Shown here one piece after another: positions 11,426 to 26,178 of a stretch of DNA of 64,000 bases. Every line of letters begins with the position of its first letter. Position 1 is the stretch's first letter. A model generated the notes under the pieces. It was given only the letters and a program-made list of their open reading frames with translations, had not been told where the DNA came from and ran no database searches. The stretch covers positions 248,001 to 312,000 of the IMG/VR virus record IMGVR_UViG_3300046517_002304; one strand, given 5' to 3'. The translations under genes and the position numbers were made by a program.

Positions 11426-11647
11426 CTACGCTGCGGTAGGGATGAACTCCTGATACCCGCTCTGTCTATCCAACGCAACCGCTACCTCTCCCGCACTCAC
11501 CGTCAAGTCCCCATGAACCTTGCCCCCTACCAGCACCCGCTTGGTATCCCGCAGTCCCACACTCCAGTGGTGGCAGCAGGTCAGCCCGCTCTCCCTGTCC
11601 CGCACGTAGACCAGACCATTCGGCAGCAGCTCGGCAGTCAGCATCAT
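11426..11647 (-). CDS. Hypothetical protein
   Basis: SD AGGAG; octamer upstream. Confidence 0.7.
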   Translation of the reverse strand: MMLTAELLPNGLVYVRDRESGLTCCHHWSVGLRDTKRVLVGGKVHGDLTVSAGEVAVALDRQSGYQEFIPTAA

Positions 11648-11668
11648 ACTTGGCTCTCCTTACAACCA

Positions 11669-11899
11669 TTAAAGGATAACTAACTGATCCGTGAACGTGT
11701 TCAGCGTGCCTGTCCCGCCCGATGCCCGGTAAGCCTCCCAGCATCGGGCCGCATAGACGACTTGCCCCAGCGAAACGAATGGCAGCCTCTTGCTGGCTTC
11801 CCGCTGGAACTCAGCCGCCTGCTGCCGATTGAACAGGCGAACTAACTCAACCCCGCCGGGCACCTTACGCAAGGCAAGTTGCGACGTTATCCGCATCAT
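11669..11899 (-). CDS. Hypothetical protein
   Basis: Start at MMRITS with AAGGGG SD. Confidence 0.6.
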   Translation of the reverse strand: MMRITSQLALRKVPGGVELVRLFNRQQAAEFQREASKRLPFVSLGQVVYAARCWEAYRASGGTGTLNTFTDQLVIL

Positions 11900-12108
11900 G
11901 GGCAACCCCCTTAATAATAAACAAACAGGTGAACAGGTGTATAGAAAGGCCCACCCGCGGCGTAGATTGAAACGCACGCGGGGGGCGGTAGCAGCTCTAC
12001 TTCCTCATTCCCTGAATGACCGCGATGACGCCCGCAAAGTAGTAGGGGGTTGCTTCCGTCATGTTACTCTCCTGTAAGAGGTCGGGGATACAGAAGGGTA
12101 GGGATAAC

Positions 12109-12372
12109 TCAGGTCGTAAAGGTTCCGTCCGCGAACGTCTGGAGAATCTGGACTTTCTTATCGTGGTTGCCGTCGTCGGCTTTGCGGTTAACCGTCAGTT
12201 CCGCCAGGGTCGCTTCTCCCGCGTTCTGATAGGCGGGAAGGAATTCCTTTACCCATTGCTTGAAGTGAGTCTCAGCGGCGTGTAGAGCGTGCCCAGGCGT
12301 AGCATCGTTGAAGACGACAATCCCTTGAACAATCTGGCGAACCATTTTGAGGACGACGTAAGAATAAATCAC
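12109..12372 (-). CDS. Hypothetical protein
   Basis: SD AGGAG; stop in octamer. Confidence 0.7.
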   Translation of the reverse strand: MIYSYVVLKMVRQIVQGIVVFNDATPGHALHAAETHFKQWVKEFLPAYQNAGEATLAELTVNRKADDGNHDKKVQILQTFADGTFTT

Positions 12373-12381
12373 GATGACTCC

Positions 12382-12591
12382 TTAGAGGGCGGTATAAACC
12401 CAGCCTGAATCGGGCCGACTATTCCAACGGTCAATCAGCTTCAGGAAATCTTGCCGATTGTAACAGTAAACGGTCTTCTCTCCGTCATGGTTGCCGTTGC
12501 CGTTGTACCGAATCCAGTGGTAGCGAAATTGTCGCATGCCAATATGATCGTTGCGGGAATACCAGACGTTGGCTGACGAATCGTGTTCCAT
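12382..12591 (-). CDS. Hypothetical protein
   Basis: Tightly packed ORF. Confidence 0.65.
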   Translation of the reverse strand: MEHDSSANVWYSRNDHIGMRQFRYHWIRYNGNGNHDGEKTVYCYNRQDFLKLIDRWNSRPDSGWVYTAL

Positions 12592-12593
12592 AA

Positions 12594-12791
12594 CTACGCC
12601 CAGGGACTTGACTTGATACGATTTTCGGCGGCTCGCAAAACGGCTGGCGTGCCAGTAAGACGATGGATAACTTCCTTCGCCTCTGCCTTTGTCATGCCGC
12701 CGATCATTCCGAGAATGCCATCGGGCATGTTCAGCGTTTTGCGGGCAACGCGGAGCTGGTGCTTTTCAGGGATACTTAGTTGTCGTGCCAT
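12594..12791 (-). CDS. Hypothetical protein
   Basis: ATG 10 nt after octamer. Confidence 0.7.
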   Translation of the reverse strand: MARQLSIPEKHQLRVARKTLNMPDGILGMIGGMTKAEAKEVIHRLTGTPAVLRAAENRIKSSPWA

Positions 12792-12801
12792 GCGGGGTAA
12801 T

Positions 12802-12949
12802 GGATAACTGCTCCCCGGCTAGTTATCCATATCTTAGGTACAGGGGAAACTATAAGAGTTAATAATTATAGTATCAGTACTTTAGCTATGGATAACTTAG
12901 AGGATCTCCGGGTAACGAAAACAGGGGGGACTTTCCCCCCTAGTTATCC
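12802..12949. repeat. Long intergenic element copy 1 (octamer pair + 77-bp IR-bounded unit + terminator)
   Basis: AGTTATCCATATCTTAGGTAC...TATGGATAACT then G6/C6 hairpin with A-tract. Confidence 0.8.
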
Positions 12950-12953
12950 CTGA

Positions 12954-13205
12954 TTAGTATTCGTCGAAGAATCCGTAGTCTTCGTCGGTCCCCATTCCGG
13001 CGCTGGTCATGGCCGAATCGTGGTCGCCATCCATATCTTCGCCGGGAATGTGGTCGTCGTCGGTCTGCTCTTCGTCTTCCAGAATTCCGACAGAGAGGAA
13101 CAGGCCAGTGGCAGCGTATGCCCGTACCAGCTTGACCGCTTCCTCTTCCGTGGCGACAACGTGCTCATGGCTGGCATTTTGCGTGCGACAGACGACAACT
13201 GGCAT
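12954..13205 (-). CDS. Hypothetical protein with acidic DGDHDSAMTSAG.GTDEDYG tail
   Basis: SD ACAGGAG before MPVVV. Confidence 0.7.
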   Translation of the reverse strand: MPVVVCRTQNASHEHVVATEEEAVKLVRAYAATGLFLSVGILEDEEQTDDDHIPGEDMDGDHDSAMTSAGMGTDEDYGFFDEY

Positions 13206-13254
13206 AGTCCTGTCTCCTGTAAGGGGGGTGCTGAATATAACAGGAGATGGATAA

Positions 13255-13467
13255 CTACGATTTGGCGAAACCGGCTCCGAGCGTCGTTTCAAATTCCCCG
13301 GCGGTCTTGCGGGTTTCGTGGTCCCAGATATAGCCGTAATCCATGTTCGGGCGATTCTGGAATTCGGCGAGGATACGACGGGCCTGTTCCATGCTTTCGG
13401 CGGGCAGAAACGAGATTGACGGCTTGCCCGGCGAAATTTTGCGATGGCCCACGACGGTGAGTTTCAT
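13255..13467 (-). CDS. Hypothetical protein
   Basis: Stop in octamer; AAGGA SD. Confidence 0.7.
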   Translation of the reverse strand: MKLTVVGHRKISPGKPSISFLPAESMEQARRILAEFQNRPNMDYGYIWDHETRKTAGEFETTLGAGFAKS

Positions 13468-13519
13468 AATTCGTTATCCTTTCAAAAATCGGGTGAAACT
13501 TACAACCGACTACGGATAA

Positions 13520-13717
13520 CTAACGGCTAATGCTCCCCGCGAGAAATCGCGTAAAGGGGTTGTGTGTCGTTTGCTGGATTTCTTCGAGGTCGGCCTTTGT
13601 TTCAGCGGCGATTCCCGATATGCGGGCATTGTCGGCGGCTGACATTTGATTTTTGTATCGGCGGGCGATTGACGTTACCTGAGTCAATGCCCGCAAGAGG
13701 TCAATCTGATCCCTCAT
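13520..13717 (-). CDS. Hypothetical protein
   Basis: ATGA-coupled; stop in octamer. Confidence 0.65.
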   Translation of the reverse strand: MRDQIDLLRALTQVTSIARRYKNQMSAADNARISGIAAETKADLEEIQQTTHNPFTRFLAGSISR

Positions 13718-14047
13718 TCTTGCATCGCTGCGATTGCAGCGGCCTTTCTAGTTCTCTGCCTACGCGGGCGGGTATCGTGAACGTGATGAGCGGTGCGGGT
13801 TTGATGACCGATAGCTACGTCAAGGTAGCCGATTTTTACGATCATCTTACGGGTTGACTTCTGTGCGGGGGTGTGCATAATTTCTAACGGATAACTAAGA
13901 CAGTCCGCACATTTTGCGGCTAAAGGAATTATCACGTTTAGGTGGCCTGAAGGAGAGCCAGGCATTCACGGCAACCCCGCGTGGGATTGGTTAACCCCAT
14001 GAATTGTTGTCCTATTATTCCCGACCCGTTTGCCGGTGCGGATTGTC

Positions 14048-14212
14048 TTAGGCGTCAACTTTCTTGATGTAATTGGATTCGAGATAAGCGTTTTTCATGG
14101 CATCCGTGTGGCCGTTGTCCCAGTGAATGATACACTCACCGTTGAGTTCATGCACCACGGTGCCCTTGAGGCCCTTCTCGTTTTGGAGGCGGTCACCCTT
14201 TTTTACATCCAT
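14048..14212 (-). CDS. Small SH3/KOW-like hypothetical protein
   Basis: SD ACAGGAG; GD....GTV...IHWDNG, similar to neighbour. Confidence 0.6.
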   Translation of the reverse strand: MDVKKGDRLQNEKGLKGTVVHELNGECIIHWDNGHTDAMKNAYLESNYIKKVDA

Positions 14213-14249
14213 TGTATACTCCTGTAAGAGACAAGAGTTAAAGGATAAC

Positions 14250-14459
14250 TCAGGCGGCACGCAATTCTTCAGCAACGCAGCCCTCTTCGTCGCCGTTATC
14301 CCATTGGACAGCGTAAATGCCGATGAAATTTCCCGGCACTCTGGCTACAATTTCGCCCCGCTTTGTTCCGTAATAATCCGTTACCCGTTGGCCGACTTCA
14401 AAAACGTATTGCATATTTGCTCCGAGGGTGCTGGTCGTAGCGAGACGTTTACGCCCCAT
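14250..14459 (-). CDS. Small SH3/KOW-like hypothetical protein
   Basis: FEVGQRV...GEIV...VQWDNG; stop in octamer. Confidence 0.6.
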   Translation of the reverse strand: MGRKRLATTSTLGANMQYVFEVGQRVTDYYGTKRGEIVARVPGNFIGIYAVQWDNGDEEGCVAEELRAA

Positions 14460-14687
14460 CTACTTTAATTCCCCCCACGTTGGAGTCCAGCGTTGCAGCG
14501 CTTACCCAATGGCGGGAGAAACTACAATCAGCGTTCCTAGGGATTACCCAGAAAAGTGAGAACATAGTAAACGAACGCGAAGAATCCGAAAATCAAGCTG
14601 CCGAATACGCCGCAGAAAACGGCCATTTCGGCGAATGGGACAATCCACTTGTCAACGAAGCGGTCCATCATGCCCCTCAAAGGATAA

Positions 14688-15071
14688 CTAACTGACGGTG
14701 TTGACGGTGATCGTCTTACGTCGCTTGCCGTTGAACGGGAGCAAGGTCACGAGAAATTCGTTGTGCCGCACGCCGCGAATGGAGTCAATAAAACCGCGAT
14801 GCTTGTTGTAGTAGAAGAGCCCGCCCTCAGACAGCTTTGCCATGAGCTGGCCGTTTGTCAGATTGCCGGGGGTCGGTTTGTTGCCGTCGTCGTTAATCAG
14901 CTTGACGATTTTCGGGATGACATCGTTATCCAAAAGACATGCTGAATCGCAGCGACTTTCAACGTCTGTCGGGTAGTTACAAACAATGTCCAGACTTTCG
15001 CCATACCGCCCGCCGATTTCAGTAAGGCGGATAATGCGATTGTCGTTAGTGATTTGGTTGTCGGCTCTCAT
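14688..15071 (-). CDS. Hypothetical protein
   Basis: Octamer-bounded ORF. Confidence 0.7.
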   Translation of the reverse strand: MRADNQITNDNRIIRLTEIGGRYGESLDIVCNYPTDVESRCDSACLLDNDVIPKIVKLINDDGNKPTPGNLTNGQLMAKLSEGGLFYYNKHRGFIDSIRGVRHNEFLVTLLPFNGKRRKTITVNTVS

Positions 15072-15105
15072 AATCGTTGTACCCTTTCAGGAACTAACGG
15101 ATAAC

Positions 15106-15345
15106 TTAGACCGCTTCCCCCCGACCGATCAGCCAATACCTATACTGGCCGTTCCGATATTCAATGACTGCGGAGCGGTCAATGTGGCTGGCATGGGTGA
15201 ACGCATGGTCGCGGCAATCGGCGAAACTGAAATCGGCAAGGCTTGGATTGACGACGAAGTAGTCAACGGCGATTGATTTGGGAGGAGCTGGCTTTGGCGG
15301 CGGGGACCATGAGCGGCGGTAGCCGTAATCGGTATATGGGTTCAT
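15106..15345 (-). CDS. Hypothetical protein
   Basis: ATG 10 nt after octamer; stop in octamer. Confidence 0.7.
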   Translation of the reverse strand: MNPYTDYGYRRSWSPPPKPAPPKSIAVDYFVVNPSLADFSFADCRDHAFTHASHIDRSAVIEYRNGQYRYWLIGRGEAV

Positions 15346-15355
15346 GGTTGTTAAT

Positions 15356-15510
15356 GGATAACTGCGGGGTGGGCTAGTTATCCATATCTTAGGTACGGGG
15401 AGAGTTTTGTTGTACTAGGATTTAACTAGTAGGTACCTAAGATATGGATAACTCTGGCGGTACGTGGCGAAAAGAAAAAACGCTCCCGTTTCGGGGAGCG
15501 TTAGTTATCC
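15356..15510. repeat. Long intergenic element copy 2 (perfect 21-bp IR, 15376-15396 / 15433-15453)
   Basis: AGTTATCCATATCTTAGGTAC and exact reverse complement; terminator at 15475-15502. Confidence 0.85.
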
Positions 15511-15521
15511 TTAGCTTTGGT

Positions 15522-15890
15522 CTATCGCAGATACTCGGGACCGTATTCGTTCATCCGTCCCATGCCCTTGCTGACGTCGTAGATGTTTCCTCTGGCGTGC
15601 TTCGCGGGGGCTTTCCACGTTGCGGGTTTCAGAATGTCGCCGTTGGCCTTGACGATGAAAGCGAAAGCTGAACCCCTGCAATCTCTGGCCCGTTCGCTGG
15701 CCCGCGATTTCCAGATGCGGACGTATTTGTTGCCGGGATCTTGGATCAACTCCTCCCGCTCCAGGGTCGGGAAGTGAGCCGCCATGTATTCATCAATTTT
15801 CTTCTGGTTATCCGCAACCCATTCCGTCAGTCGCTTCTGAAAGGTCGCGGCCTGTTCGTCGGCATGTCGCTGCAATTCGGCGGCATCCAT
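15522..15890 (-). CDS. Phage hypothetical protein (GDILKPATWKAPAKHARGNI motif)
   Basis: SD CAGGAG; motif familiar from T4-like phage hypotheticals. Confidence 0.75.
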   Translation of the reverse strand: MDAAELQRHADEQAATFQKRLTEWVADNQKKIDEYMAAHFPTLEREELIQDPGNKYVRIWKSRASERARDCRGSAFAFIVKANGDILKPATWKAPAKHARGNIYDVSKGMGRMNEYGPEYLR

Positions 15891-16320
15891 TGTATACTCC
15901 TGAGTAAGGTTGACAATGGGGAATGGATAACTAGCTGACCCGCACCAAGGCCCCACCGTTGCGAATGTCATGCCACGCGAAGCGAATGCCGTGCCGATCC
16001 AAAAATTCGGCGAAGCGAATTGCTCCCAGCGGGTGATTGAACAGGAACGAACGACCGATCCGACGAAAGCTAAGTTTATCCATCTGAGTTATCCTCTTGA
16101 GGAAAATGGACTCACTCTGGATTACGGATAACTAAACGTGCGGCATGTCGTGTGGAGTCAGTATTGCCCACCGGGCTAGGTGGTCCCGCTCCCAGTCTAT
16201 ACGCCGAACGCCTAGTTATAAAAACGAATGGATAACTAAGCAAGTGAGGACGCCAAAATCGTTTTGTCCCTTTCGGAAGATTGCCGATCTGGCTATGTCT
16301 CTTGCCTAGTTATCCGTAGC

Positions 16321-16518
16321 TTAGTTCTGGCGATACTTCGCAATCGCCGAGGCCATCGCGTCGTCAACGGTGCTGCCAGCGGCTACTGCTTCGCGGGTTT
16401 CGCTGAAGATTTTGCTGAGGTCAAACATCATCACCTCAACGCCGTTCCCAAGGCGGCTGTAGGCGTTGTCAATGCTGTCGTCCAACTGCTTTTCGGCTTT
16501 CGTCCTACGTTTCGCCAC
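16321..16518 (-). CDS. Hypothetical protein
   Basis: GTG start with ACAGGAG SD. Confidence 0.65.
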   Translation of the reverse strand: MAKRRTKAEKQLDDSIDNAYSRLGNGVEVMMFDLSKIFSETREAVAAGSTVDDAMASAIAKYRQN

Positions 16519-16561
16519 GATACTCTCCTGTAAGGGGTGACTGATGAGAGTTAAAGGATAA

Positions 16562-16849
16562 CTAGCCGACAGTGAACAGCGGTCGGGTGTATTCCGCCAT
16601 GACCGCCTTATCACTCTGGCGAACGATACGGGCAGCGGAAACTGTCGTCGGGCCGAGATGTTTGTTGCCGCCGGTGCGAGTTGATTCCTCAAAAGCAGCG
16701 ACGTATTTCCGCAAGTTATCCGCAGTCGGTTGACCGTCGCCAGGGACTTGCTCTTGCGGCGATTTTCGCAGTCGCCATTCGCAAGGCGTGTAGATGAAGC
16801 CGGGAACCTTAATCTCAACCGTGAAAGGAATCGCTCTTGATCGTCCCAT
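16562..16849 (-). CDS. Hypothetical protein
   Basis: SD ACAGGAG; stop in octamer. Confidence 0.75.
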   Translation of the reverse strand: MGRSRAIPFTVEIKVPGFIYTPCEWRLRKSPQEQVPGDGQPTADNLRKYVAAFEESTRTGGNKHLGPTTVSAARIVRQSDKAVMAEYTRPLFTVG

Positions 16850-16884
16850 GATAATCTCCTGTTAAGACAGGGAGAAATGGATAA

Positions 16885-17094
16885 CTATTCGCTGATTGTT
16901 TGCGTGTAGGGGATTTCCCCTAATGATTGGAGAATTTCCTCCGCAAGCACATTGCCGGCGTCAGCTCTGAGTTTCAACCCGCCGGCGATCAAGGCAAGTT
17001 TTCCGAGCGACAGGCCAGTAATTTCGTAAAGGTCGTACGCTCCCTTGATTAGTCCCTTAGTTTTCGTCAGTCCTAGCTTTTGCCCTTTCTTCAT
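16885..17094 (-). CDS. Hypothetical protein
   Basis: SD ACAGGAG; stop in octamer. Confidence 0.7.
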   Translation of the reverse strand: MKKGQKLGLTKTKGLIKGAYDLYEITGLSLGKLALIAGGLKLRADAGNVLAEEILQSLGEIPYTQTISE

Positions 17095-17271
17095 GGTATC
17101 TCCTGTGAGAGAAAATTATAAGACTGCCCGTGTTTTCGTCCGCGACAGCACCGCAATGCCGCCAACTGCCTCACCGACCGTTGCCGGGTAATCCGTGGTC
17201 TAGAACACACGACGTTCTACTTCCACGGGCCAGGTTTAGGAGCCTGTTGTCTTACGGTCGGATATGGATAA

Positions 17272-17463
17272 CTAGATGATCGGCATTGAAACCGTGCTGC
17301 CCTTGATTTCCGTGTCAACGATCTTGATATGATTGTTCGGACAATCCAAAGTGAAATTGTAGTCACAATCGGTCGCTGCCATATCGCCCGCGACTTCAGG
17401 TGAAAATACGTGCGGGTGTTCAATGTCAACCGCGACGACAAAGTAAACGCGGGATTTCAGCAT
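17272..17463 (-). CDS. Hypothetical protein
   Basis: SD AAGGAG; stop in octamer. Confidence 0.7.
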   Translation of the reverse strand: MLKSRVYFVVAVDIEHPHVFSPEVAGDMAATDCDYNFTLDCPNNHIKIVDTEIKGSTVSMPII

Positions 17464-17472
17464 GACGCTCCT

Positions 17473-17850
17473 TTATTCGTTTGAGTAACTCAAATCGTCG
17501 CTTGGCTGAAGTTGATTCCAGATATGCCCGCAATTTTCGCATGATTCACCATGCAACGCGGACTCAGGAATCGGCTCTTGACAGTCGGGACATTCGCCCT
17601 TATCATATTCGTTTCGGACGAGATCAGACGGAACCCAAGTCAGACGTTTGGGGAATGGTTTTTTATCACGGAAGCAAAGGATTCGTAAATCGCCCGATGC
17701 CTGACTTTTTGCAGAGGCAAGCGTAGGTGCCCAGTCCTGCCGATTAGTCCCGACTTTGTAACTCCAAAATGGAACAATGCCAGGCGTAGCAATCGGTTGC
17801 TGCCAGATTGTGCATTCGTAGTTCAGGTGTTTGGCGGTATACTGGAGCAT
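17473..17850 (-). CDS. Protein with C-terminal CxxC-CxxC zinc ribbon
   Basis: CPDC...CENC; ATG 10 nt after octamer. Confidence 0.7.
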   Translation of the reverse strand: MLQYTAKHLNYECTIWQQPIATPGIVPFWSYKVGTNRQDWAPTLASAKSQASGDLRILCFRDKKPFPKRLTWVPSDLVRNEYDKGECPDCQEPIPESALHGESCENCGHIWNQLQPSDDLSYSNE

Positions 17851-17860
17851 ACGATTTAAT

Positions 17861-18003
17861 GGATAACTCATCGCCGCCTAGTTATCCATATCTTAGGTAC
17901 GCAGAGAGTTTTGTTGTACTAGGATTTAACTAGTAGGTACTCTAGCTATGGATAACTAGACCTATCAGCTAGGCCAAAAAAATTGGCCCGGGTTTTCCGG
18001 GCC
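17861..18003. repeat. Long intergenic element copy 3
   Basis: 78-bp unit 17880-17957 near-identical to 15376-15453; terminator hairpin follows. Confidence 0.85.
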
Positions 18004-18282
18004 TTGTCCTATTCACCTTGCAGGTTATCCCCCTGATAAGCGGCGTAGCTCTTCTCATCGTGCCAAGTCAGCTTGACCGCACGGCAGGTCGTGAAATCGT
18101 GGTTCCAGAAAAAATCGTAATAGCGGGGGGTGAGATTTCGGTGTTCCCCGCGAGCAAATTGCTCCGCAGTGAATTCAATCATACCGGTTATCCTTTTAAT
18201 CGGGTGAAACTTACAACCGATTACGGATAACTAGAATGACCCTCCCTAGGTATCACTAGGGAGGGTCGGAGGGACGAACGCA

Positions 18283-18753
18283 TCAGGCAGCGGACTTGTC
18301 GGTCTTCTTCTTCGCGGGTTTCTTCGCAGCGACGGCTTTCGTCTTCGCGGCACGCGGCTTGCGGGGTTTGGCGGGTTTCGGGGTTTCGGCGACAGGTGCC
18401 GGCGGTTCAGGGGCGAGCGGTTCAACGGTCGGGGCGTCGTCCACCACAACGGCAGGCTTTCGCTTGCGTTGACGCGGGGCGGTCGGAAGGGCGACGGATT
18501 CGCCAACGGTCGGGATGATCTTTTCGCAGTCCAGTTGCACGCGGACACAATCGGTATCGTGATAGACTTCCAGCACCTTGCACTGAATGCCCATCCAGAC
18601 AGCGGCGGCCAGGCGGAAGAGATTCAGTCGGCCCTTATGGTCGCGGGACAACTCAACGCCGGTGATCGTGGTATCCTTTCGGTCACGAAACTTCAACTGC
18701 GGTTCTACCACCACTTCGCGGGGCTTTTCCTGTTCCTCAACTTCCATACGCAT
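18283..18753 (-). CDS. Protein with Pro/Lys/Ala-rich histone-like tail
   Basis: KPAKPRKPRAAKTKAVAAKKPAKKK. Confidence 0.7.
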   Translation of the reverse strand: MRMEVEEQEKPREVVVEPQLKFRDRKDTTITGVELSRDHKGRLNLFRLAAAVWMGIQCKVLEVYHDTDCVRVQLDCEKIIPTVGESVALPTAPRQRKRKPAVVVDDAPTVEPLAPEPPAPVAETPKPAKPRKPRAAKTKAVAAKKPAKKKTDKSAA

Positions 18754-18933
18754 CGCATACTCCTTAGAGAAGGGGGATTGTTGATTGTTAAGGGATAACT
18801 AACGCCAGTTAGGTGCCACTTCGGTCAACTGGACTACCTCGCACTCTATAGGACTTCGCGGGTGCATGGACGGTCGCAGGCGATTTCAACAGGCCCGCGT
18901 GCGTCTCGGTTAGTTACAACAATGAATGGATAA

Positions 18934-19122
18934 CTAGAAGCTGGATTTTCGTTCGTCCTGAGGCTTCGGCGGCATCGTCAGGCCATCCTGAAAAATCGCC
19001 CGACTTCGCAGCCATTGCAGCATTCCCTTCCAGCGTTCGGGGGGGATATGGTCGGGGCAACCGAAATCGTATCTGGTACATACCAGAAACGAATCAAGGT
19101 TCATTTTGCTGCAATCAATCAT
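18934..19122 (-). CDS. Hypothetical protein
   Basis: Octamer-bounded ORF. Confidence 0.55.
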   Translation of the reverse strand: MIDCSKMNLDSFLVCTRYDFGCPDHIPPERWKGMLQWLRSRAIFQDGLTMPPKPQDERKSSF

Positions 19123-19173
19123 AATACTATCAAACGGATAACTTAGTTGTTAGCTAGTTATCCGTAGCTTGTG

Positions 19174-19404
19174 TCAGTTGCCGTAAGCAAGGCCCATAGC
19201 AATCAACTCTTCGGCCACGCGCCGGGAAATCCGCAGCGCTCCGACATTGCCATTACGAACAATCGTGAGCTGAGGCCGACAACCATGAAACAAGTTGATA
19301 GTTGGCCGATGATCCGCTTTGGGAAGATTTCGGACTTTGCCGTCAATGCTGCCCTTCGGGAGCAACTCAGCAGCAGAGAAATCGGGGAGTTTACTTTTCG
19401 ACAT
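19174..19404 (-). CDS. Hypothetical protein
   Basis: ORF in co-directional cluster. Confidence 0.65.
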   Translation of the reverse strand: MSKSKLPDFSAAELLPKGSIDGKVRNLPKADHRPTINLFHGCRPQLTIVRNGNVGALRISRRVAEELIAMGLAYGN

Positions 19405-19413
19405 TTTGACCTT

Positions 19414-19698
19414 TCATTCGTAAGATGGAATCTCTTCGTCAATCAGATAATTGCGGCAAAGTTTCAAGGCGTCAATCGCGTTGTCCCGTTCGTTTCGCCA
19501 GAATTTGAGGACTTGCCGCTTGGCATTCTCTGCCGTCAAAAACCAGTAGCCAGTGCCGGCACCCTCTGCATGAGCTATCTGGCCGTTGTCAAAAACTACA
19601 ATCTCTTGATCGTCGTCAATGAGAATGTCTTTATAACAGAGGCCGATGGCACAGCAGTTTTGTTCAACCCATCCGTATACTCGGACTTGCTTGCTCAT
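19414..19698 (-). CDS. Hypothetical protein
   Basis: Follows octamer pair. Confidence 0.7.
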   Translation of the reverse strand: MSKQVRVYGWVEQNCCAIGLCYKDILIDDDQEIVVFDNGQIAHAEGAGTGYWFLTAENAKRQVLKFWRNERDNAIDALKLCRNYLIDEEIPSYE

Positions 19699-19749
19699 AA
19701 TGATTGCTAATGGATAACTAGTTGCCCGCTAGTTATCCATAGCTAGGTT

Positions 19750-19971
19750 TCAATGGATGTGAGTCTGGGACTTAAGTATGATGTCCTGATTTTCCTGTGC
19801 GGTCGCAACGCCCGTCAGAAGTCGGGTAGTGTAGATGACGACGTATCGCGGTTCGCCAGTCATACTATCGTGAGGCAGGTCAATCACTTGCATGCTTTCG
19901 CCAGGGTCAAGATTGCCAAGCAACTCAACCATTGCGTCGTGATTCCGACAGTGATAAACGGCGACAAGCAT
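19750..19971 (-). CDS. Hypothetical protein
   Basis: AAGGA SD supplied by an inverted octamer. Confidence 0.65.
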   Translation of the reverse strand: MLVAVYHCRNHDAMVELLGNLDPGESMQVIDLPHDSMTGEPRYVVIYTTRLLTGVATAQENQDIILKSQTHIH

Positions 19972-19994
19972 TGTGAGTTATCCTTTACTAAAAT

Positions 19995-20068
19995 TGGGGA
20001 TGCTAGGACTCGAACCTAGGACCAAAAAATTATGAGTTTTCTGCTCTGACCAACTGAGCTACACCCCC
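19995..20068 (-). tRNA. tRNA with CAT anticodon (elongator Met or Ile2)
   Basis: Cloverleaf: GGGGGTG/CATCCCC acceptor, CTCATAA loop, GGTTCGAGTCC T-arm; CCA not encoded. Confidence 0.9.
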
Positions 20069-20074
20069 GGTGAT

Positions 20075-20533
20075 TTACGCCGCTCCCGCGACCTTACCCC
20101 GACACTCGGGACCGAAACCTGATTCAATACTCTCGGGAACCGTCAACGTCTTGAGGCAACGCCCGCACCTGCCAGCGTTATGCAACTTGAAACCAGCCGC
20201 CTCAATCGCAGCCGTATCGCCCGCCCATACGCGAGCCAGCACGCGATTAATCAATTTGAACGTCATTGAATCCTTTGTGAATTTTGACAGCTTCGTAATC
20301 GTGACTTCGCCGGTGAAAGCATTGACCTTGCCTACGTCGCTGTAATCCCGTATATTTTCGGGACCAGTCAACTTGCCGACCCACCAAGCCTCCGGAAATT
20401 CTGCCGTTGCTTCCGAATAGTTCACGCGATACGTATAATGAGGCTTGCAGCCGTGTTTCGCCGCGAATTCAGCGGGCAACTCAAGAGTAAAAATTGCCTT
20501 GCCAGCGAGGACGAATTCTTTTGTAATCATCAT
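20075..20533 (-). CDS. DUF6011-like zinc-binding protein
   Basis: CGRC..TLTVPESIESGFGPEC. Confidence 0.7.
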   Translation of the reverse strand: MMITKEFVLAGKAIFTLELPAEFAAKHGCKPHYTYRVNYSEATAEFPEAWWVGKLTGPENIRDYSDVGKVNAFTGEVTITKLSKFTKDSMTFKLINRVLARVWAGDTAAIEAAGFKLHNAGRCGRCLKTLTVPESIESGFGPECRGKVAGAA

Positions 20534-20634
20534 ACACTCCTGTTTTATAATTGACAGAAGGGTAGGGATAACTAAAAGACTCTACGCGGCAGTAGTTCCC
20601 ATGGGCGGGCCTTACCGCGTCAGAGTCCAAAACA

Positions 20635-21027
20635 TCACGCAACCGACGACGACCGCAACCGAGCGACTTCGTTGACGTAGGCAGCGGCTTCCGTATCAAC
20701 CGAAAGATACTCCAGAATTTTCTTGTTGACGATGAACGGAGCAACTCCGACGAATTCCCCGACGTATCCCCGAATCGCCGTGCTATACTTTCCGCAGAGC
20801 GAAAGGGCAACGTGATTGAAGGGGGAAACCTTGCGGTTGAGGATGACTTCATCATCCGACCGCCCGCCGAATCCCAAGGCGCGGGCCTCATTCGCCCGAT
20901 TCTGTTTGTCCTTCAGCAAGTCCAGACGAACCTGAGCCATTGCGACATTCGCCGCTGCCTTTGACTGCTGTTTGGCCGACTTCGGCTGAGTCATGCGAAT
21001 ATGAAGCGTCTTTTCGGTCTTCGCCAT
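20635..21027 (-). CDS. Hypothetical protein
   Basis: SD ACAGGAG. Confidence 0.75.
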   Translation of the reverse strand: MAKTEKTLHIRMTQPKSAKQQSKAAANVAMAQVRLDLLKDKQNRANEARALGFGGRSDDEVILNRKVSPFNHVALSLCGKYSTAIRGYVGEFVGVAPFIVNKKILEYLSVDTEAAAYVNEVARLRSSSVA

Positions 21028-21097
21028 AACTTCTACTCCTGTTTAAGAATTGCCTTGACGAATGAGAATGGATAACTACACTAGCGAAAGTTATCCA

Positions 21098-21334
21098 CTA
21101 TTTCGGCGGTCCCTGATTTTTTACTTCGTCCTGCCACGTTGCTTGCTGCCATTCGTGGCTGAAATCTTCGCAAGCCGCTTCCATCTCGGTGATGACTTCG
21201 CGGCAGGCATCGGTCACACTTACGGCAGCGGCACTATCACGATACCGCTCTTGAATCAATTTTCCCAAAGCACGGCGGGTCACATTGCCGCGATTAAATC
21301 TGAGAATGAGAGCCTCAAGAAATTCATCCATCAT
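21098..21334 (-). CDS. Hypothetical protein
   Basis: ATGA-coupled. Confidence 0.65.
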   Translation of the reverse strand: MMDEFLEALILRFNRGNVTRRALGKLIQERYRDSAAAVSVTDACREVITEMEAACEDFSHEWQQATWQDEVKNQGPPK

Positions 21335-21618
21335 ACCCCCTCTACGGATAACTCAGGTTTTTTGAATTTTACCAACTCGGGAAACAACTCAGTCGCTTGT
21401 GTCGGTTGGCCGAATTTGACCGCTCGTAAAATTGCTCTTGACGGCGGGCCAGTCCATCGCCTCCAATGTGATTTGTCGATACGGTTTAACTCAACCGCCC
21501 GTACCCATTGCCCGCCGATCTTAACCGCTCCATCGTATGAACCGACAAAGCTATAATAATTGGCGTCAGAATTCCGTATGCTTCTGGAAATCGTCTTGCC
21601 TAGGTCGTAGTTGGGCAT
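21331..21618 (-). CDS. Hypothetical protein
   Basis: ATG 10 nt after octamer. Confidence 0.65.
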   Translation of the reverse strand: MPNYDLGKTISRSIRNSDANYYSFVGSYDGAVKIGGQWVRAVELNRIDKSHWRRWTGPPSRAILRAVKFGQPTQATELFPELVKFKKPELSVEGV

Positions 21619-21635
21619 GGAGTTTAAGGGATAAC

Positions 21636-22217
21636 TCAGTGTCTCTTTGCCTTGGCACGAAGATAGGCGTCTTCCCACGCATACGCCTCTTCTGCCGTGA
21701 CCGTGCCGCCGATTGCATTGAACATTGCATTCAGCTTGCGATTGTATTCAGCAGCATGCCGACGAACAACGGCAGGATTTGCCTCACCGTCGCAATGCAG
21801 AGTCTCGGGTTCAAGTGCCGCATAGCAAGCAACGATTGCCGCCATGATAGCCTTATCAATATTGGATTGCAGAATCGGATGGAAAACCGAATTTGCTGGT
21901 TGAACGCGACCGACCCCGAGCAACTTCATTGCGTCAACCGTCGCAACGTCAGCGGCGGTCAGCGTCACCTTTTCGCGGGGAGTTTCGGTCTTCTGCGAAG
22001 TAACCCGAGCAACGTCTGCCTCTGTTGCGGGAGTAAGCATTTCATAAGGGACAACCCAAATTGACCCTACTTCGCTGCCACGCCCGTACCCGCGTTGCTC
22101 CAATATGCGAACTTTCGCTTTGACGCGGTTACGCTTGAAAATTTTAGCGATAGTCCTTTGACCATTTTCGCGGCCAAAGCTCACCGGCATTCCGTCGTAT
22201 GCTTGTTCGTAATTCAT
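21636..22217 (-). CDS. Hypothetical protein (LEPETLHCDGE motif)
   Basis: ATG 10 nt after octamer; stop in octamer. Confidence 0.75.
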   Translation of the reverse strand: MNYEQAYDGMPVSFGRENGQRTIAKIFKRNRVKAKVRILEQRGYGRGSEVGSIWVVPYEMLTPATEADVARVTSQKTETPREKVTLTAADVATVDAMKLLGVGRVQPANSVFHPILQSNIDKAIMAAIVACYAALEPETLHCDGEANPAVVRRHAAEYNRKLNAMFNAIGGTVTAEEAYAWEDAYLRAKAKRH

Positions 22218-22227
22218 ATTTGCCAAT

Positions 22228-22368
22228 GGATAACTCATCGCCGCCTAGTTATCCATATCTTAGGTACGTAGCAGATATTGTTGTACTAGGATTTTCTAAT
22301 GTTGTACTCTAGTTATGGATAACTGGCCAGGACTACAGGCCAAAAAATTAGCCCCCGTTTAGCCGGGG
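22228..22368. repeat. Long intergenic element copy 4
   Basis: First ~40 bp identical to copy 3; 78-bp unit 22247-22324; terminator. Confidence 0.85.
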
Positions 22369-22600
22369 GAACGCTGACGCTCATTAGCCGCGAGCGACGA
22401 CAGCAAGGTGTAAGGGATAACTCAGTCAAACAAATCCCGCTTTGCCTGATAGCCGTCATCTTCCGGCCCCCAGGTATTTTCGCAGTTGCCGTGTTCGTCA
22501 ATGTAACGAATCACGCCAGTAAGGTCAAGCTGAAGACAACCGCCGTCTTCCATTTCCAACTCTTGCATAATCAGGACTCCTTTAATTGTTAAGGGATAAC

Positions 22601-22789
22601 TCAGACGGGAACGTGAATGAATTCAATCGTTACGTGCTGGCGGGCAAATCTTCGGGCTTCCTCAATCGCCTCTAGTAAGTTATGATTAGAAGCGATTCCA
22701 AGCATTACGCCCCCTTCGTCGCGGGGAGCATTGCCGAAAATGTCATACCCTCTATAATCATTCGCTTGCACGTAAATCGCCGTAATCAT
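22601..22789 (-). CDS. Hypothetical protein
   Basis: Coupled; stop in octamer. Confidence 0.65.
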   Translation of the reverse strand: MITAIYVQANDYRGYDIFGNAPRDEGGVMLGIASNHNLLEAIEEARRFARQHVTIEFIHVPV

Positions 22790-23451
22790 TTTTCACCACC
22801 TACAAGAGACAGCAGCAATTCGGCGACGGCATTGTTTGTGAAGCGGGTAAGTTTCAAGTCCCTGATCGTGTTGACTCGGGGCTGGCAGTATTCGGCGAAC
22901 GCGGCGGAAATTTCCACAAGCTGATGATTGACTTCAACCAGATTCAACAGGTCGCGGTCAATCGCCTTGATGTATTCCTCTTTCTCGGTGAGTTGCTTCA
23001 CCACTTCAGCAAAAATGCCGTTGTAGCTTCGCCAATCGGGATTGTCCCAATCCTTAGACAAGTAGGTAGAAAGCCTATCGTCGCAACCGATGACCGCCTC
23101 ACGCAAGTAATACTGAGGACCGTCGCCCTTGCTTCGCTCAATCTGTTTGAGCATTTTATTCGACAGCAATTCGGCGGGATAGTAAACTTCACCGCCCCAA
23201 ATTTTGACGCGGACGTTGTAGTTCTCATTCTCCAGAATGACGCTCCACCCCTTGGCGAATGGGTTGTCTGATTTCGCCAAATCGGCCTTGAATTCGCGGA
23301 CCAGCACGTTATCCACACGAACACGATGCTTGATACGGTTCAGGGTGCCGATGAGAATCCCGAGGAGGAAACTTTCAACCTCTGCCACGAGGCGAGCACG
23401 GCGAAGATTCTTTTCGGCTGCAATCGTTTGCGGGAGCGGTGCGAATTCCAT
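22786..23451 (-). CDS. Hypothetical protein
   Basis: SD CAGGAG; 221 aa. Confidence 0.8.
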   Translation of the reverse strand: MEFAPLPQTIAAEKNLRRARLVAEVESFLLGILIGTLNRIKHRVRVDNVLVREFKADLAKSDNPFAKGWSVILENENYNVRVKIWGGEVYYPAELLSNKMLKQIERSKGDGPQYYLREAVIGCDDRLSTYLSKDWDNPDWRSYNGIFAEVVKQLTEKEEYIKAIDRDLLNLVEVNHQLVEISAAFAEYCQPRVNTIRDLKLTRFTNNAVAELLLSLVGGEK

Positions 23452-23491
23452 GGGATACTCCTGAGTAATGTTGACGAAAGTTAAAGGATAA

Positions 23492-23776
23492 CTATTCGCT
23501 CACGTAGACTTTGCCGTGAGCGATGTAGTCCAGTGCCGTCGCCCAATCGCATCGCGGCTCTTCGCAAATGATCGTTGTCTTGCCGTCAAACGTGACCCCG
23601 ACAGAAATCAGTCTATCAGGATTTGTCGGAAGGGCCAGCAGAGTAATATTACGCTGCCGCCACTTGTTGACGGTGGCTCCGATGAGCGGAAGCTGTACGA
23701 TTTCTTCCATGCTCAACGTGGTATTGTTATGAATCTGCATAACGGCCTGATTGTTTGTTTTCATAATGAGCATCAA
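23492..23776 (-). CDS. Hypothetical protein
   Basis: Octamer-bounded ORF. Confidence 0.65.
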   Translation of the reverse strand: MMLIMKTNNQAVMQIHNNTTLSMEEIVQLPLIGATVNKWRQRNITLLALPTNPDRLISVGVTFDGKTTIICEEPRCDWATALDYIAHGKVYVSE

Positions 23777-23872
23777 GGGATAACTGAAAAATTGGCGGGC
23801 CAGCTTGCGTTCAGTATTATCGGGCGTTCCCTAACCTACTAGCAAGCCGTTCCCCGCCGTGAGATCAGTAAT

Positions 23873-23976
23873 GGATAACTAGCTGGCCTCATAGTTATCC
23901 ATATCTTAGGTACAGAGCAATTTTTAATTCTTATAATGAAATAAAAAAACGCCAGCGGGTGATTCCCGCCAGCGTT
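23873..23976. repeat. Long intergenic element copy 5 (single arm) plus terminator
   Basis: GGATAACT-12 nt-AGTTATCCATATCTTAGGTAC. Confidence 0.75.
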
Positions 23977-24197
23977 ATCAAATTCTAGCCCTCAAGGTTC
24001 TAACCTATCTAAACAAACCCCGATGTATAGTATGGCAGGCCGCTCTGCCGGCGCGACGGCACTAGGGAGAATGATGATTGATCTATGCTACATAGTAGGC
24101 TCCGGGCTAGTGGAGCAAAGCATAGCAAAATCAGCAGTGGAAGAAAAATAAACATAATGATTCCGAGGTTTTTGGCAGTTGCACACTATACTAAAGC

Positions 24198-24677
24198 ATG
24201 CAAAAGTTTAACTGCGGGACTTGTGGAAAAGAAGTTTATCGACCGACTTGGAGAATCAAAAAATGTTTAACTGGCATTTTTTACTGTAGCCAGAAATGTT
24301 GCTGTGATGCTAATAACAAAAAAAAGGCGGATCAGGTTAGTGGTATGAGAAAAGGCGAAGTACTAAACCACTGTTCCACGTCCAGTAGGTTCGCAACGAT
24401 ACGGAAAAATGCTAGGCGAACATACCTTGCGTCAGACAAACCTAAGTGCTGCCTAGTATGCGGGTATTCTAAGCATATTGAAATTTGCCATGTTCAGGGG
24501 ATTACAACATTCCCCGATGAGACGAAGTTAATCGTTATCAACGATCTGACAAATCTCGTTGCTTTATGTCCGACCCATCATTGGGAGTTAGACAATAAGC
24601 AGCTTGACGAAGAAATACTCCCGGAAAGATTCGCACTTTCGACCCCCGGGTTAGAAACCCGATGCTCTATCTGCTGA
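24198..24677 (+). CDS. HNH endonuclease with N-terminal Cys-rich zinc finger
   Basis: CLVC...EICHV...NLVALCPTHH; antisense to surrounding genes. Confidence 0.8.
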   Translation: MQKFNCGTCGKEVYRPTWRIKKCLTGIFYCSQKCCCDANNKKKADQVSGMRKGEVLNHCSTSSRFATIRKNARRTYLASDKPKCCLVCGYSKHIEICHVQGITTFPDETKLIVINDLTNLVALCPTHHWELDNKQLDEEILPERFALSTPGLETRCSIC

Positions 24678-24688
24678 GCTACGAGAGC
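24616..24688 (-). tRNA. tRNA-Arg(TCT)
   Basis: Cloverleaf: GCTCTCG/CGGGAGT acceptor, TTTCTAA loop; atypical T-loop TGCGAAT. Confidence 0.85.
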
Positions 24689-24744
24689 AACTGACAGACA
24701 ACAATGGATAACTCAGGAGTTCCTGAGTTATCCTTACCTGAAAT

Positions 24745-24957
24745 TCAAGCGACAACTTTTCCGTGTCTGATCCAGTCCAGTTCGCCACCGAAACACGATA
24801 CGGATGAACCGTCAGGAAAAGCCACTAAGTAATGAGCACGATTTGACATCATTTTCTTGCTCTTCACGCGACCAACCTTGTTGGTTCGCTCATAGAGCAC
24901 CGGGTCACCGACATTATGCTCGGGAACGAATTCCGCACGATAGCCAACAGACTTCAT
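24745..24957 (-). CDS. Hypothetical protein
   Basis: SD ACAGGAG before MKSVGY. Confidence 0.65.
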   Translation of the reverse strand: MKSVGYRAEFVPEHNVGDPVLYERTNKVGRVKSKKMMSNRAHYLVAFPDGSSVSCFGGELDWIRHGKVVA

Positions 24958-25006
24958 AATCGTTGCTCCTGTAGAGTTGTGGACTTGATGCCTGTTAAGG
25001 GATAAC

Positions 25007-25297
25007 TCAGGATTCGGTGGAATGAACAATCAGGATATAGCTCTGACTCTCTTCCGGCGATGAACCAGCAACGTAAAATTGCCCGTCCATCAGGCAGTCC
25101 TCAAATTCGTCGGGAGTCATCACGTTTTCAATGCCGGGGGACGATTCTTTCGCCCACTTCAGGAATAGCTCTTCCGCTTGGCTATTCCCATCCTTATCGT
25201 CGGGGAAGGATGCCAGCTTGTCTACAACTGACTTATCGCTCACCCAAATCACGTTGACGGTTTTAAGCACGGCAATTACTCCAAAAGAAAAGACCAC
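25007..25297 (-). CDS. Hypothetical protein
   Basis: Stop in octamer. Confidence 0.6.
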   Translation of the reverse strand: MVFSFGVIAVLKTVNVIWVSDKSVVDKLASFPDDKDGNSQAEELFLKWAKESSPGIENVMTPDEFEDCLMDGQFYVAGSSPEESQSYILIVHSTES

Positions 25298-26148: not shown

Positions 26149-26178
26149 AATCGGTTCCTTTAATTACTAAAGGATAAC

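What the first reader, a model, noticed from the sequence alone, without database searches (positions are those of the whole stretch)
12802..23976. Repeated ~150-bp module: terminator + 77-78-bp inverted-repeat element + octamer pair
Seen: copies at 12802-12949, 15356-15510, 17861-18003 and 22228-22368, a one-armed copy at 23873, and a variant at 26526. In transcription order each has a GC hairpin with U-tract, an IR-bounded unit of constant length (77, 78, 78, 78 bp), 11-12 nt, an octamer, 10 nt and an ATG. At 15376-15453 the 21-bp arms (AGTTATCCATATCTTAGGTAC) are perfect. Copies 2 and 3 are nearly identical across the unit; copies 3 and 4 share about 40 identical bp. Known: T4-type PeSL terminator-promoter cassettes mediate modular shuffling, and MITEs and attC sites are IR-bounded units of this size. 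Inference: these are the full-length form of the element, and the solo octamers are its minimal form or scars.
Basis: partly seen in the sequence, partly recalled or inferred. Interest (0 to 1): 0.85.

Follow-up and report, generated by a model that had tools for sequence, protein, structure and literature searches.

The report
Phage terminator–promoter junction cassettes
The repeated ~150-bp modules are real. They look like boundaries between transcription units of a 511-kb soil phage, each built from an ordinary terminator plus extra copies of the phage's own unusual, invariant 8-bp promoter signal, and not like mobile elements.

Summary
Observation confirmed. There are four full modules (12789-12949, 15343-15510, 17848-18003, 22215-22369), a one-armed copy (23873-23976), a three-arm tandem variant (26526-26721) and a degenerate copy (28647-28745).

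The context changes the reading. AGTTATCC occurs 133 times in the window (1.7 expected), 114 of them on the gene strand at gene starts. It carries an invariant T at +9 and a pyrimidine-purine step at +17/+18, whether the ATG sits exactly at +18 (38 genes without a Shine-Dalgarno (SD) ribosome-binding site) or further downstream behind an SD. It also precedes a tRNA and ORF-less structured RNAs. Three relatives with about 57% protein identity have the same octamer. More distant relatives each have their own per-gene motif. The best reading is a phage-specific promoter core.

The 21-bp arms are a second, uniform class of this promoter-like site (octamer plus 13 fixed bp, lacking the start dinucleotide). 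The arms do not co-vary, there are no target-site duplications, and every module sits between an intrinsic terminator and the unit's first promoter. Relatives build equivalent cassettes from their own motifs, including on both sides of the helicase gene.

Verdict: these are regulatory terminator-promoter cassettes, analogous to PeSL (promoter-early stem-loop cassettes of T4-type phages) but not PeSL members. They are not MITE-like (miniature inverted-repeat transposable elements) or attC-like (integron recombination sites). How the arms act is inferred, because no RNA data exist.

The parts
12789..12949 (-). Module 1. Reverse octamer 12942-12949; terminator stem 12922-12942 with U-tract 12912-12921; distal arm 12877-12897; centre 12842-12876; proximal (reversed) arm 12821-12841; 11-nt spacer; promoter octamer 12802-12809; ATG 12789-12791 (gene 12594-12791).
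15343..15522 (-). Module 2. Class-II-like reversed copy 15503-15522; terminator 15479-15502; distal arm 15433-15453; centre 15397-15432; proximal arm 15376-15396 (perfect IR); 12-nt spacer; promoter octamer 15356-15363; ATG 15343-15345 (gene 15106-15345).
17848..18003 (-). Module 3. Terminator 17985-18003; distal arm 17937-17957; centre 17901-17936; proximal arm 17880-17900; 11-nt spacer; promoter octamer 17861-17868; ATG 17848-17850 (gene 17473-17850, Zn-ribbon).
22215..22369 (-). Module 4. Terminator 22352-22369; distal arm 22304-22324; centre 22268-22303; proximal arm 22247-22267; 11-nt spacer; promoter octamer 22228-22235; ATG 22215-22217 (gene 21636-22217).
23786..23976 (-). Module 5 (one-armed). 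Terminator 23948-23976; reversed arm 23893-23913; 12-nt spacer; promoter octamer 23873-23880. It is followed by an ORF-less 78-nt structured RNA with U-tract (23786-23863). The reversed arm points toward the + strand HNH gene 24198-24677.
26443..26721 (-). Module 6 (tandem variant). Terminator 26696-26721; three reversed arms 26638-26658, 26592-26612 and 26546-26566 (46-bp period); 12-nt spacer; promoter octamer 26526-26533; 83-nt leader; gene 26179-26442.
28647..28745 (-). Module 7 (degenerate), upstream of the helicase N-terminal-half gene. GC hairpin about 28709-28745; forward class-II-like site 28684-28704 (octamer plus the 13-bp palindrome GTATCTAAGATAC); second octamer 28647-28654; ATG 28605.
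19136..19163 (.). Divergent octamer pair (10-bp IR, 12-nt spacer) at an ordinary gene junction with no terminator. The reversed copy is class-II-like.
19712..19751 (.). Divergent octamer pair (11-nt spacer). The reversed copy is class-II-like (2 mismatches to the 21-mer).
21070..21096 (.). Divergent octamer pair (11-nt spacer) in front of gene 20635-21027.
24706..24733 (.). Divergent octamer pair forming a perfect 12-bp palindrome. The forward octamer lies 17 nt upstream of tRNA-Arg (24615-24689).
11406..63573 (-). Field of 114 gene-strand AGTTATCC promoter cores, about one per gene. Signature: T(-1), octamer, T(+9), Y(+17) R(+18).

Best explanation
The modules are junctions between transcription units in a phage-specific transcription system.

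(1) AGTTATCC is the core of the phage's own promoter. Transcription probably starts 10 nt after it, at the conserved pyrimidine-purine step. That would give leaderless mRNAs where the ATG sits at +18, and SD-led mRNAs elsewhere.

(2) In the 11-30 kb part of the window, genes are grouped in units of roughly 1.5-4 kb, each closed by an ordinary intrinsic terminator.

(3) One to three copies of a second, uniform 'class II' form of the promoter-like site lie between each terminator and the first promoter of the next unit. Class II is the octamer plus the fixed 13 bp ATAKCTWAGGTAC. It keeps the recognition part (octamer, T+9) but lacks the normal start dinucleotide. One copy is always reversed and sits 11-12 bp from the gene-proximal promoter, forming a divergent 10-bp palindromic pair. 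A second, forward copy 36 bp further upstream produces the 77-78-bp inverted repeat.

(4) These are DNA-level recognition sites for the phage transcription machinery. The sites set how the first promoter of each unit fires, either as a second (differently timed or regulated) promoter class or as non-initiating binding and insulating sites.

The inverted-repeat shape follows from the arrangement of the sites and is not a selected hairpin. Shown here: the anatomy, statistics, conservation, lack of covariation, and recurrence of the architecture in relatives. Inferred: promoter function, the start site, and what binds the arms.
For: Octamer as promoter:
- 133 copies against 1.7 expected, 114 on the gene strand.
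- T+9 in 112/114. Y-R at +17/+18 in 89/109 non-class-II copies against a 24% background. This holds both for genes with the ATG at +18 and for genes with an SD and the ATG 19-60 nt away.
- It precedes tRNA-Arg with the Y-R step 6 nt before the mature 5' end. It also precedes ORF-less structured RNAs that end in U-tracts.
- It restarts expression directly after terminators.
- No sigma70-type conservation or enrichment.
- The same octamer and signature occur in L034, L035 and L036, relatives at 56-58% helicase identity.
- Distant relatives each have their own strand-specific per-gene motif. L155 has a 16-mer with 17 perfect copies. L154 and L156 have a two-block motif.

Arms as class II sites:
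- The 13-bp extension never occurs without the octamer.
- All six 21-mer modules (1-6) directly follow a strong terminator found by the scan. Module 7 follows a GC hairpin with a long loop that the scan did not list.
- Antisense-oriented copies have T at +18 in 16/19 and no more than 1/19 has the Y-R start.
- There is no compensatory change. All variation is on the distal arm.
- L155 has a second class of its own 16-mer, always with A at position 7. It appears in direct and inverted clusters after terminators and 19-24 nt upstream of class I promoters, and once directly in front of a gene.
- L034 has ten 25-27-bp palindromes made of a one-base variant of the octamer with the same N11 spacing. 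At least four follow terminators and eight lie 4-13 nt upstream of an octamer.
- L156 has divergent pairs of its own motif.
- Such clusters flank the helicase gene in the window, L034 and L155.
Against: - There is no transcript data, so the start site, promoter activity and activity of the arms are all unproven. No RNA run was listed.
- No polymerase or sigma gene has been identified. Only 64 kb plus a few loci of the 511-kb contig could be read.
- An 8-bp core is short for a single-subunit polymerase promoter.
- In L034 and L036 the secondary elements do not contain the exact octamer. A separate regulator could therefore bind them.
- The reversed arms point at terminators, not at genes (except toward the HNH gene). 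If they fire, their product has no obvious role.
- Several 5' leaders use the reverse octamer as part of the SD, which hints at RNA-level roles.
Confidence: 0.55

Rival explanations
1. The arms are operators for a separate phage-encoded dimeric regulator (repressor or activator). In this phage the sites happen to be fused to octamer copies. Binding to the divergent 10-bp pair would occlude or recruit polymerase at the first promoter of each unit.
For: The divergent pairs are 10-bp palindromes with a tight 11-12 bp spacer, about two helical turns. In 9 of 10 pairs the otherwise variable +8 base matches between the two halves, including one G/G pair. The L034 palindromes have the same N11 geometry but a variant half-site. 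L036 uses a 14-mer without an octamer. The cores ATAGCTAA and CTTAGGTA are shared across lineages. The copy at 28684 carries a 13-bp palindrome.
Against: No DNA-binding protein was found among about 40 window proteins scanned. In the window and in L155 the secondary sites track the lineage's own promoter sequence, which is most simply explained by the same reader. The arrangements are too varied for one dimer geometry: inverted at 57 bp, tandem at 46 bp, direct at 24 bp.
Confidence: 0.2
2. The inverted repeats act as RNA (or extruded DNA) hairpins. Possible roles are a 21-bp stem serving as an RNase III processing site or a stabiliser, and an 8-10-bp stem just upstream of the AUG that controls translation of read-through transcripts.
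For: The units fold strongly (RNA z-scores -2.5 to -8.9). The centres of copies 1-3 contain a small hairpin built from different sequences. Several leaders pair the octamer with a reverse octamer that overlaps the SD.
Against: Zero compensatory pairs: three arm positions are mispaired in 3 of 4 copies, and all change is on one arm. One-armed and tandem-direct versions cannot form the stem. A terminator lies immediately upstream, and the predicted start of the distal arm lies at its 3' end, so the distal arm would rarely be transcribed.
Confidence: 0.08
3. The units are mobile or recombinogenic DNA elements (MITE-like, attC-like or PeSL-like) whose spread created the copies. Regulation is secondary.
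For: Homology is confined to the cassette, 66-81% against about 50% in the flanks. A 44-nt identical run includes a spacer with no evident function in copies 3 and 4. Small genes are shuffled among relatives. PeSLs provide a precedent (PMC2839356, PMC4122927).
Against: There are no target-site duplications. Every copy lies in the same position and orientation relative to terminator and promoter. There are no attC-type extrahelical bases or core sites. No integrase or transposase was found. The assembled contigs of four runs that hold this phage show no deletion, inversion or empty site. Equivalent cassettes in relatives are built from different sequences at syntenic places.
Confidence: 0.05
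4. The octamer is an RNA-level translation signal: ribosome tethering or termination-reinitiation between tightly packed cistrons. On this view the modules are elaborations of that signal, not of a promoter.
For: In 68 of 114 copies the upstream ORF's stop codon overlaps the octamer. In 34 copies the ATG follows exactly 10 nt later with no SD. The octamer RNA is the exact complement of E. coli 16S rRNA nt 147-154.
Against: The same signature (T+9, Y-R at +17/18) holds when the ATG is 19-60 nt away behind a normal SD. It also precedes a tRNA and ORF-less RNAs, and it follows terminators where no upstream ribosome arrives. The match is not to the anti-SD tail. An 8-mer matches somewhere in a 1.5-kb rRNA about 2% of the time by chance, and the host is unknown.
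Confidence: 0.06
5. The class II clusters are replication-origin elements: iterons or DnaA-box-like sites, or promoters that prime replication as at the T7 origins.
For: The clusters flank the helicase gene in three lineages, and there are three tandem copies with a 46-bp period. TTATCC is the first six bases of the DnaA box.
Against: Only 1 of 133 octamers continues as TTATCCACA. Box position 8 is T, not C, in 128 of 133. Real DnaA-box clusters found in unrelated contigs look different. Seven dispersed modules in 16 kb, each tied to a terminator-promoter junction, do not fit a single origin.
Confidence: 0.05

Closest known systems
PeSL (promoter-early stem-loop) cassettes of T4-type phages (PMC2839356, PMC4122927)
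   Same: Small repeated terminator-plus-promoter cassettes lying between ORFan genes in a plastic genome region. Homology is confined to the cassette. Gene order is shuffled among relatives.
   Different: The promoter part is not sigma70-like. It is a phage-specific 8-bp core. The cassettes carry extra inverted or tandem promoter-derived 21-mers that PeSLs lack. Recombination between copies has not been shown here.
Lineage-specific promoters of phage-encoded RNA polymerases (T7/T3/SP6 group; two promoter classes in T7). Comparison from general knowledge.
   Same: A near-invariant short sequence lies immediately upstream of the presumed start. It is repeated before many genes. It differs between related phage lineages (8-mer here, 16-mer in L155). 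A second, more uniform class exists.
   Different: The conserved core is only 8 bp plus 3 scattered positions. There is one copy per gene, more than 110 in 53 kb. Many predicted transcripts are leaderless. The polymerase is unidentified.
T4 late promoters (8-bp TATAAATA read by gp55). Comparison from general knowledge.
   Same: An 8-bp element alone, with no -35 element, is placed before many genes.
   Different: The sequence is unrelated. The element ends 10 nt before the inferred start, not about 6. It marks small non-structural ORFan genes, not late structural genes. In relative L034 the motif stops before the capsid-gene region.
MITEs and integron attC sites
   Same: IR-bounded units of 77-78 bp in several copies.
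   Different: No target-site duplication, no extrahelical bases or R/L core sites, and no integrase. The regulatory context is fixed. The arms are copies of the genome's promoter signal.

Membership tests
PeSL cassette | Stem-loop that is an intrinsic transcription terminator | tested here: met
   A GC hairpin with U-tract lies directly upstream of each of the six 21-mer modules (modules 1-6).
PeSL cassette | Strong sigma70-like early promoter (-35/-10) | tested here: not met
   The logo shows no conservation upstream of -2 and no TATAAT-like hexamer. Sigma70-like hits are not associated with the modules and are not enriched at 31-51 kb.
PeSL cassette | Lies among ORFans in a hyperplastic region | tested here: met
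   About 40 proteins were scanned and most have no family. One module-adjacent gene has no homologue at all.
PeSL cassette | Recombination between copies (indels, mini-circles) | tested here: inconclusive
   Homology is restricted to the cassette and gene order is shuffled among relatives. No true joints were seen in the contigs of 4 runs. Contigs drop rare variants.
MITE | Terminal inverted repeats | tested here: met
   21-bp arms.
MITE | Target-site duplication flanking the element | tested here: not met
   The flanks of the four units share no duplicated bases.
MITE | Insertion in varied contexts, with presence/absence polymorphism | tested here: not met
   All copies share the same context and orientation. 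There is no polymorphism in runs X1, X4, X5, X6.
Integron attC | Folded single strand with extrahelical bases and RYYYAAC / GTTRRRY cores | tested here: not met
   The ssDNA folds show only symmetric mismatches. GGATAAC and GTTATCC each fit only two of the four degenerate core positions.
Integron attC | Integron integrase nearby | tested here: inconclusive
   None was found among the ORFs scanned, but not every ORF was scanned.
DnaA-box cluster | TTATCCACA consensus | tested here: not met
   1 of 133 octamers continues with ACA, and box position 8 is T in 128 of 133. Contrast the true clusters in L077, L085, L148 and L151.
Promoter of a phage-encoded RNA polymerase | Lineage-specific conserved sequence abutting the start site and repeated before genes | tested here: met
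   The start site itself is inferred from the Y-R step.
Promoter of a phage-encoded RNA polymerase | Mapped 5' triphosphate ends; polymerase gene in the genome | not testable with these tools
   No RNA run was listed. Only about 90 kb of the 511-kb contig could be fetched.
RNase III processing hairpin | About 20 bp of maintained dsRNA stem | tested here: not met
   The stem is perfect only in copy 2. There are no compensatory changes, and one-armed and tandem forms exist.

The most novel reading that the evidence does not exclude
A clade of soil (huge) phages uses an undescribed transcription system. Each lineage has its own near-invariant per-gene promoter: an 8-mer here, a 16-mer in L155, a two-block motif in L154 and L156. 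The promoter overlaps the upstream stop codon, and here it yields dozens of leaderless mRNAs. A second promoter-derived site class, arranged in divergent and convergent pairs, insulates or times transcription units. The same junctions may act as microhomology that shuffles single-gene cassettes.
Probability: 0.25. Interest if true: 0.8.

Novelty: new variant of a known kind. Interest (0 to 1): 0.62.

Why it matters
Huge phages are known mostly from metagenomes, and their gene regulation is almost unexplored. This locus provides three things:
- a precise, testable promoter model: the octamer, T+9, and a start at +18;
- a large predicted set of leaderless phage genes;
- a second site class that marks transcription-unit boundaries and co-evolves with the promoter across lineages.

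It would allow transcription units to be annotated in such genomes from sequence alone. It points to an unidentified polymerase or specificity factor. It also extends the idea of regulatory cassettes as drivers of ORFan shuffling beyond T4-type phages.

Tried and rejected
- Megablast of 12 kb against INPHARED phages found no match.
- tblastn of the helicase found only cultured-phage hits at 36% identity or less.
- Exact scans for the 21-mer and for a strict promoter pattern in IMG/VR and JGI metagenomes returned only the source contig plus single chance hits.
- A two-octamer gapped scan returned chance hits and genuine DnaA-box clusters, which are not relatives.
- Laying contigs of four runs on 12500-18400 showed identical sequence. 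Contigs broke at the repeats, and the loose ends were simply the other copies. There were no real deletions.
- No RNA run was listed.
- Rfam found nothing besides tRNAs.
- Literature searches by motif found only primers and DnaA or 16S contexts.
- The homologue search for the gene behind module 4 found nothing.
- Atlas searches of two module-adjacent proteins gave no usable lead.
- Contigs of two unsplit-helicase relatives could not be fetched.
- Rejected: a sigma70 promoter, a DnaA box, an SD-like pairing with the 16S 3' tail (reasoned from general knowledge of the tail sequence, not run as a tool test), and recoded-stop read-through. On the last point, the ATG at +18 is out of frame with the TAG at -1, and the helicase halves are out of frame by 52 nt.

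Full report
**Source.** The window is bases 248001-312000 of IMGVR_UViG_3300046517_002304, a 511,233-bp viral contig. Six soil and rhizosphere DNA runs hold the 12.5-18.4 kb stretch, sharing 65-99% of its sampled words; the contig pieces of the four runs laid on it (X1, X4, X5, X6) carried no base differences. Nearly all genes lie on the - strand. Most are small ORFans. No cultured phage is close.

**Observation.** In transcription order, each full module contains:
- a GC hairpin with U-tract;
- 24-27 nt;
- a forward 21-mer;
- 35-36 nt;
- a reversed 21-mer;
- 11-12 nt;
- AGTTATCC, then 10 nt, then the ATG.

The 21-mer has 14 copies against 0.03 expected. Its 13-bp extension never occurs apart from the octamer. 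Modules are 66-81% identical to one another, while their flanks are unrelated. Further forms exist: a one-armed copy at 23873-23976, three tandem reversed arms at 26546-26658, and a degenerate copy at 28684-28704 in front of the helicase gene.

**The octamer is the key.** AGTTATCC occurs 133 times (1.7 expected). Of these, 114 are on the gene strand, roughly one per gene from 11.4 kb to the end of the window. Only seven one-mismatch variants that keep the T at +9 exist; the scan required that T.
- In 68 copies the upstream ORF's stop codon overlaps the 5' edge of the octamer.
- In 34 copies the ATG follows exactly 10 nt later without an SD. Elsewhere a normal SD and ATG follow 19-60 nt later.
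- Both groups share an invariant T at +9 and a pyrimidine-purine step at +17/+18. The step is present in 89 of 109 copies against a 24% background.
- The same signal precedes tRNA-Arg and ORF-less structured RNAs that end in U-tracts.
- It follows terminators directly, both in the window and elsewhere on the contig.
- There is no sigma70-like conservation.

I read this as a phage-specific promoter core with the start 10 nt downstream. On that reading, about 38 genes in the window would be leaderless. This is an inference, because no RNA data could be obtained.

**Close relatives.** The UvrD-like helicase is split into two out-of-frame ORFs with an octamer between them. Three metagenomic relatives at 56-58% identity have the same split. 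All three carry the same octamer at high density: 31, 11 and 7 copies. They also show the same T+9 and Y-R signature. Apart from the helicase pair, gene order is not conserved.

**Distant relatives.** These were reached through a Zn-ribbon protein, and for L155 also through the helicase. They lack the octamer, but each has its own strand-specific per-gene motif.
- L155 has a 16-mer with 17 perfect copies that contains the upstream gene's TAG.
- L154 and L156 have a two-block motif.

Promoters that differ between lineages are what one expects from a phage-encoded polymerase or specificity factor.

**What the arms are.** The arms are not a selected hairpin. The proximal, reversed arm is invariant in five copies. 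The distal arm varies at four positions with no compensation. One-armed and tandem-direct versions exist. ssDNA folds show only symmetric mismatches and no attC-like extrahelical bases. There are no target-site duplications.

The arms keep the promoter's recognition part (octamer, T+9) but replace the initiation region with a fixed sequence. Antisense-oriented copies have T at +18 in 16 of 19 cases and essentially never show the Y-R start. They therefore form a distinct 'class II' site.

The same architecture recurs in relatives, built from their own sequences.
- L034 has ten 25-27-bp palindromes made of a one-base variant of the octamer with N11 spacing. At least four follow intrinsic terminators and eight lie 4-13 nt upstream of an octamer.
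- L036 has direct repeats of a 14-mer that shares the core ATAGCTAA, plus one copy inside a terminator loop.
- L155 has a second class of its 16-mer, always with A at position 7. It forms direct and inverted clusters after terminators and 19-24 nt upstream of class I promoters, and it appears once directly in front of a gene.
- L156 has divergent pairs of its own motif.

Such clusters lie on both sides of the helicase gene in the window, L034 and L155. The positions are conserved while the sequences turn over. That pattern fits regulatory sites and does not fit mobile elements.

**Mechanism.** The terminator closes the upstream unit. The class II sites are read at the DNA level by the phage transcription machinery or by a factor that co-evolves with it. 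The plain octamer 11-12 bp from the reversed arm is the unit's first promoter.

The sequence cannot decide what the class II sites do. They could be a second promoter class: the forward copy would fire into the unit with a leader of about 90 nt, and the reversed copy would fire away, for example toward the + strand HNH gene at 24198-24677. Alternatively they could be non-initiating binding or insulating sites. I give the overall reading 0.55. A separate dimeric regulator gets 0.2, and the RNA-hairpin, mobile-element, translational and origin readings get 0.05-0.08 each.

**Comparison with known systems.** The closest known system is the PeSL cassette of T4-type phages, a sigma70 promoter plus a terminator stem-loop that mediates ORFan shuffling. 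The cassettes here work like PeSLs in layout and context. They fail the defining sigma70-promoter feature, and they carry extra promoter-derived sites. Recombination between copies remains unproven. They are not DnaA boxes.

Noticed in passing
window 4386-11074 (-): Tandem array of about 25 paralogous genes of 80-106 aa (N-termini MKAEVKI..., C-termini ..EYR..G.E). Stops and starts overlap, GC is 35%, and there is no octamer. The array is sharply set off from the 50% GC octamer region that begins at 11.4 kb.
   Followed up: partly
window 26802-28605 (-); L034 1931-3672; L035 866-2620; L036 982-2717: The UvrD-like helicase is split into N- and C-terminal ORFs that are out of frame. An octamer and an SD lie in the 48-50-nt gap. 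The same split occurs in three relatives, while more distant homologues (L155) are unsplit.
   Followed up: partly
window 24198-24677 (+): An HNH endonuclease gene is the only supported + strand gene in the octamer region. It overlaps tRNA-Arg (24615-24689, - strand) and lies downstream of the reversed arm of the one-armed module.
   Followed up: partly
window 23786-23863 (-), 26696-26795 (-), 26443-26525 (-); L034 1431-1502, 4004-4119: Transcription units without ORFs, each an octamer followed by a structured RNA and a U-tract. The leader at 26443-26525 resembles the one at the syntenic place in L034. No Rfam family matches.
   Followed up: partly
window 13464-13521, 18178-18232, 16087-16133, 27594-27641, 19976-19983: 5' leaders in which a reverse octamer (AAAGGATAAC) supplies the SD. 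In read-through RNA it could pair with the octamer about 35 nt upstream and mask the SD.
   Followed up: no
window 1-64000: Three compositional zones: about 35% GC at 1-10 kb, about 50% at 12-30 kb (terminators, SD-led genes, + strand octamers) and about 44% at 30-64 kb (mostly leaderless genes, with no excess of terminators).
   Followed up: partly
L153 406-413 (E. coli rrsB nt 147-154): The octamer RNA is the exact complement of a conserved 16S rRNA segment. This is probably coincidence, and the host is unknown.
   Followed up: partly
L154 and L156 (whole loci): In the GC-rich distant relatives, the block GCCACAG is often flanked by complementary bases (for example CCCCTG-CCA-CAGGGG). This gives a short stem with a 3-nt loop, reminiscent of hairpin promoters of N4-type virion polymerases.
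   Followed up: no
L077, L085, L148, L151: Unrelated IMG/VR contigs carry dense clusters of true DnaA boxes (AGTTATCCACAG). They were found by accident with the two-octamer scan.
   Followed up: no
window 3306-4139 (-); L006 583-1665: A repeat-containing 277-aa protein with a weak DUF6745 hit has paralogues about 75 kb away on the same contig.
   Followed up: no
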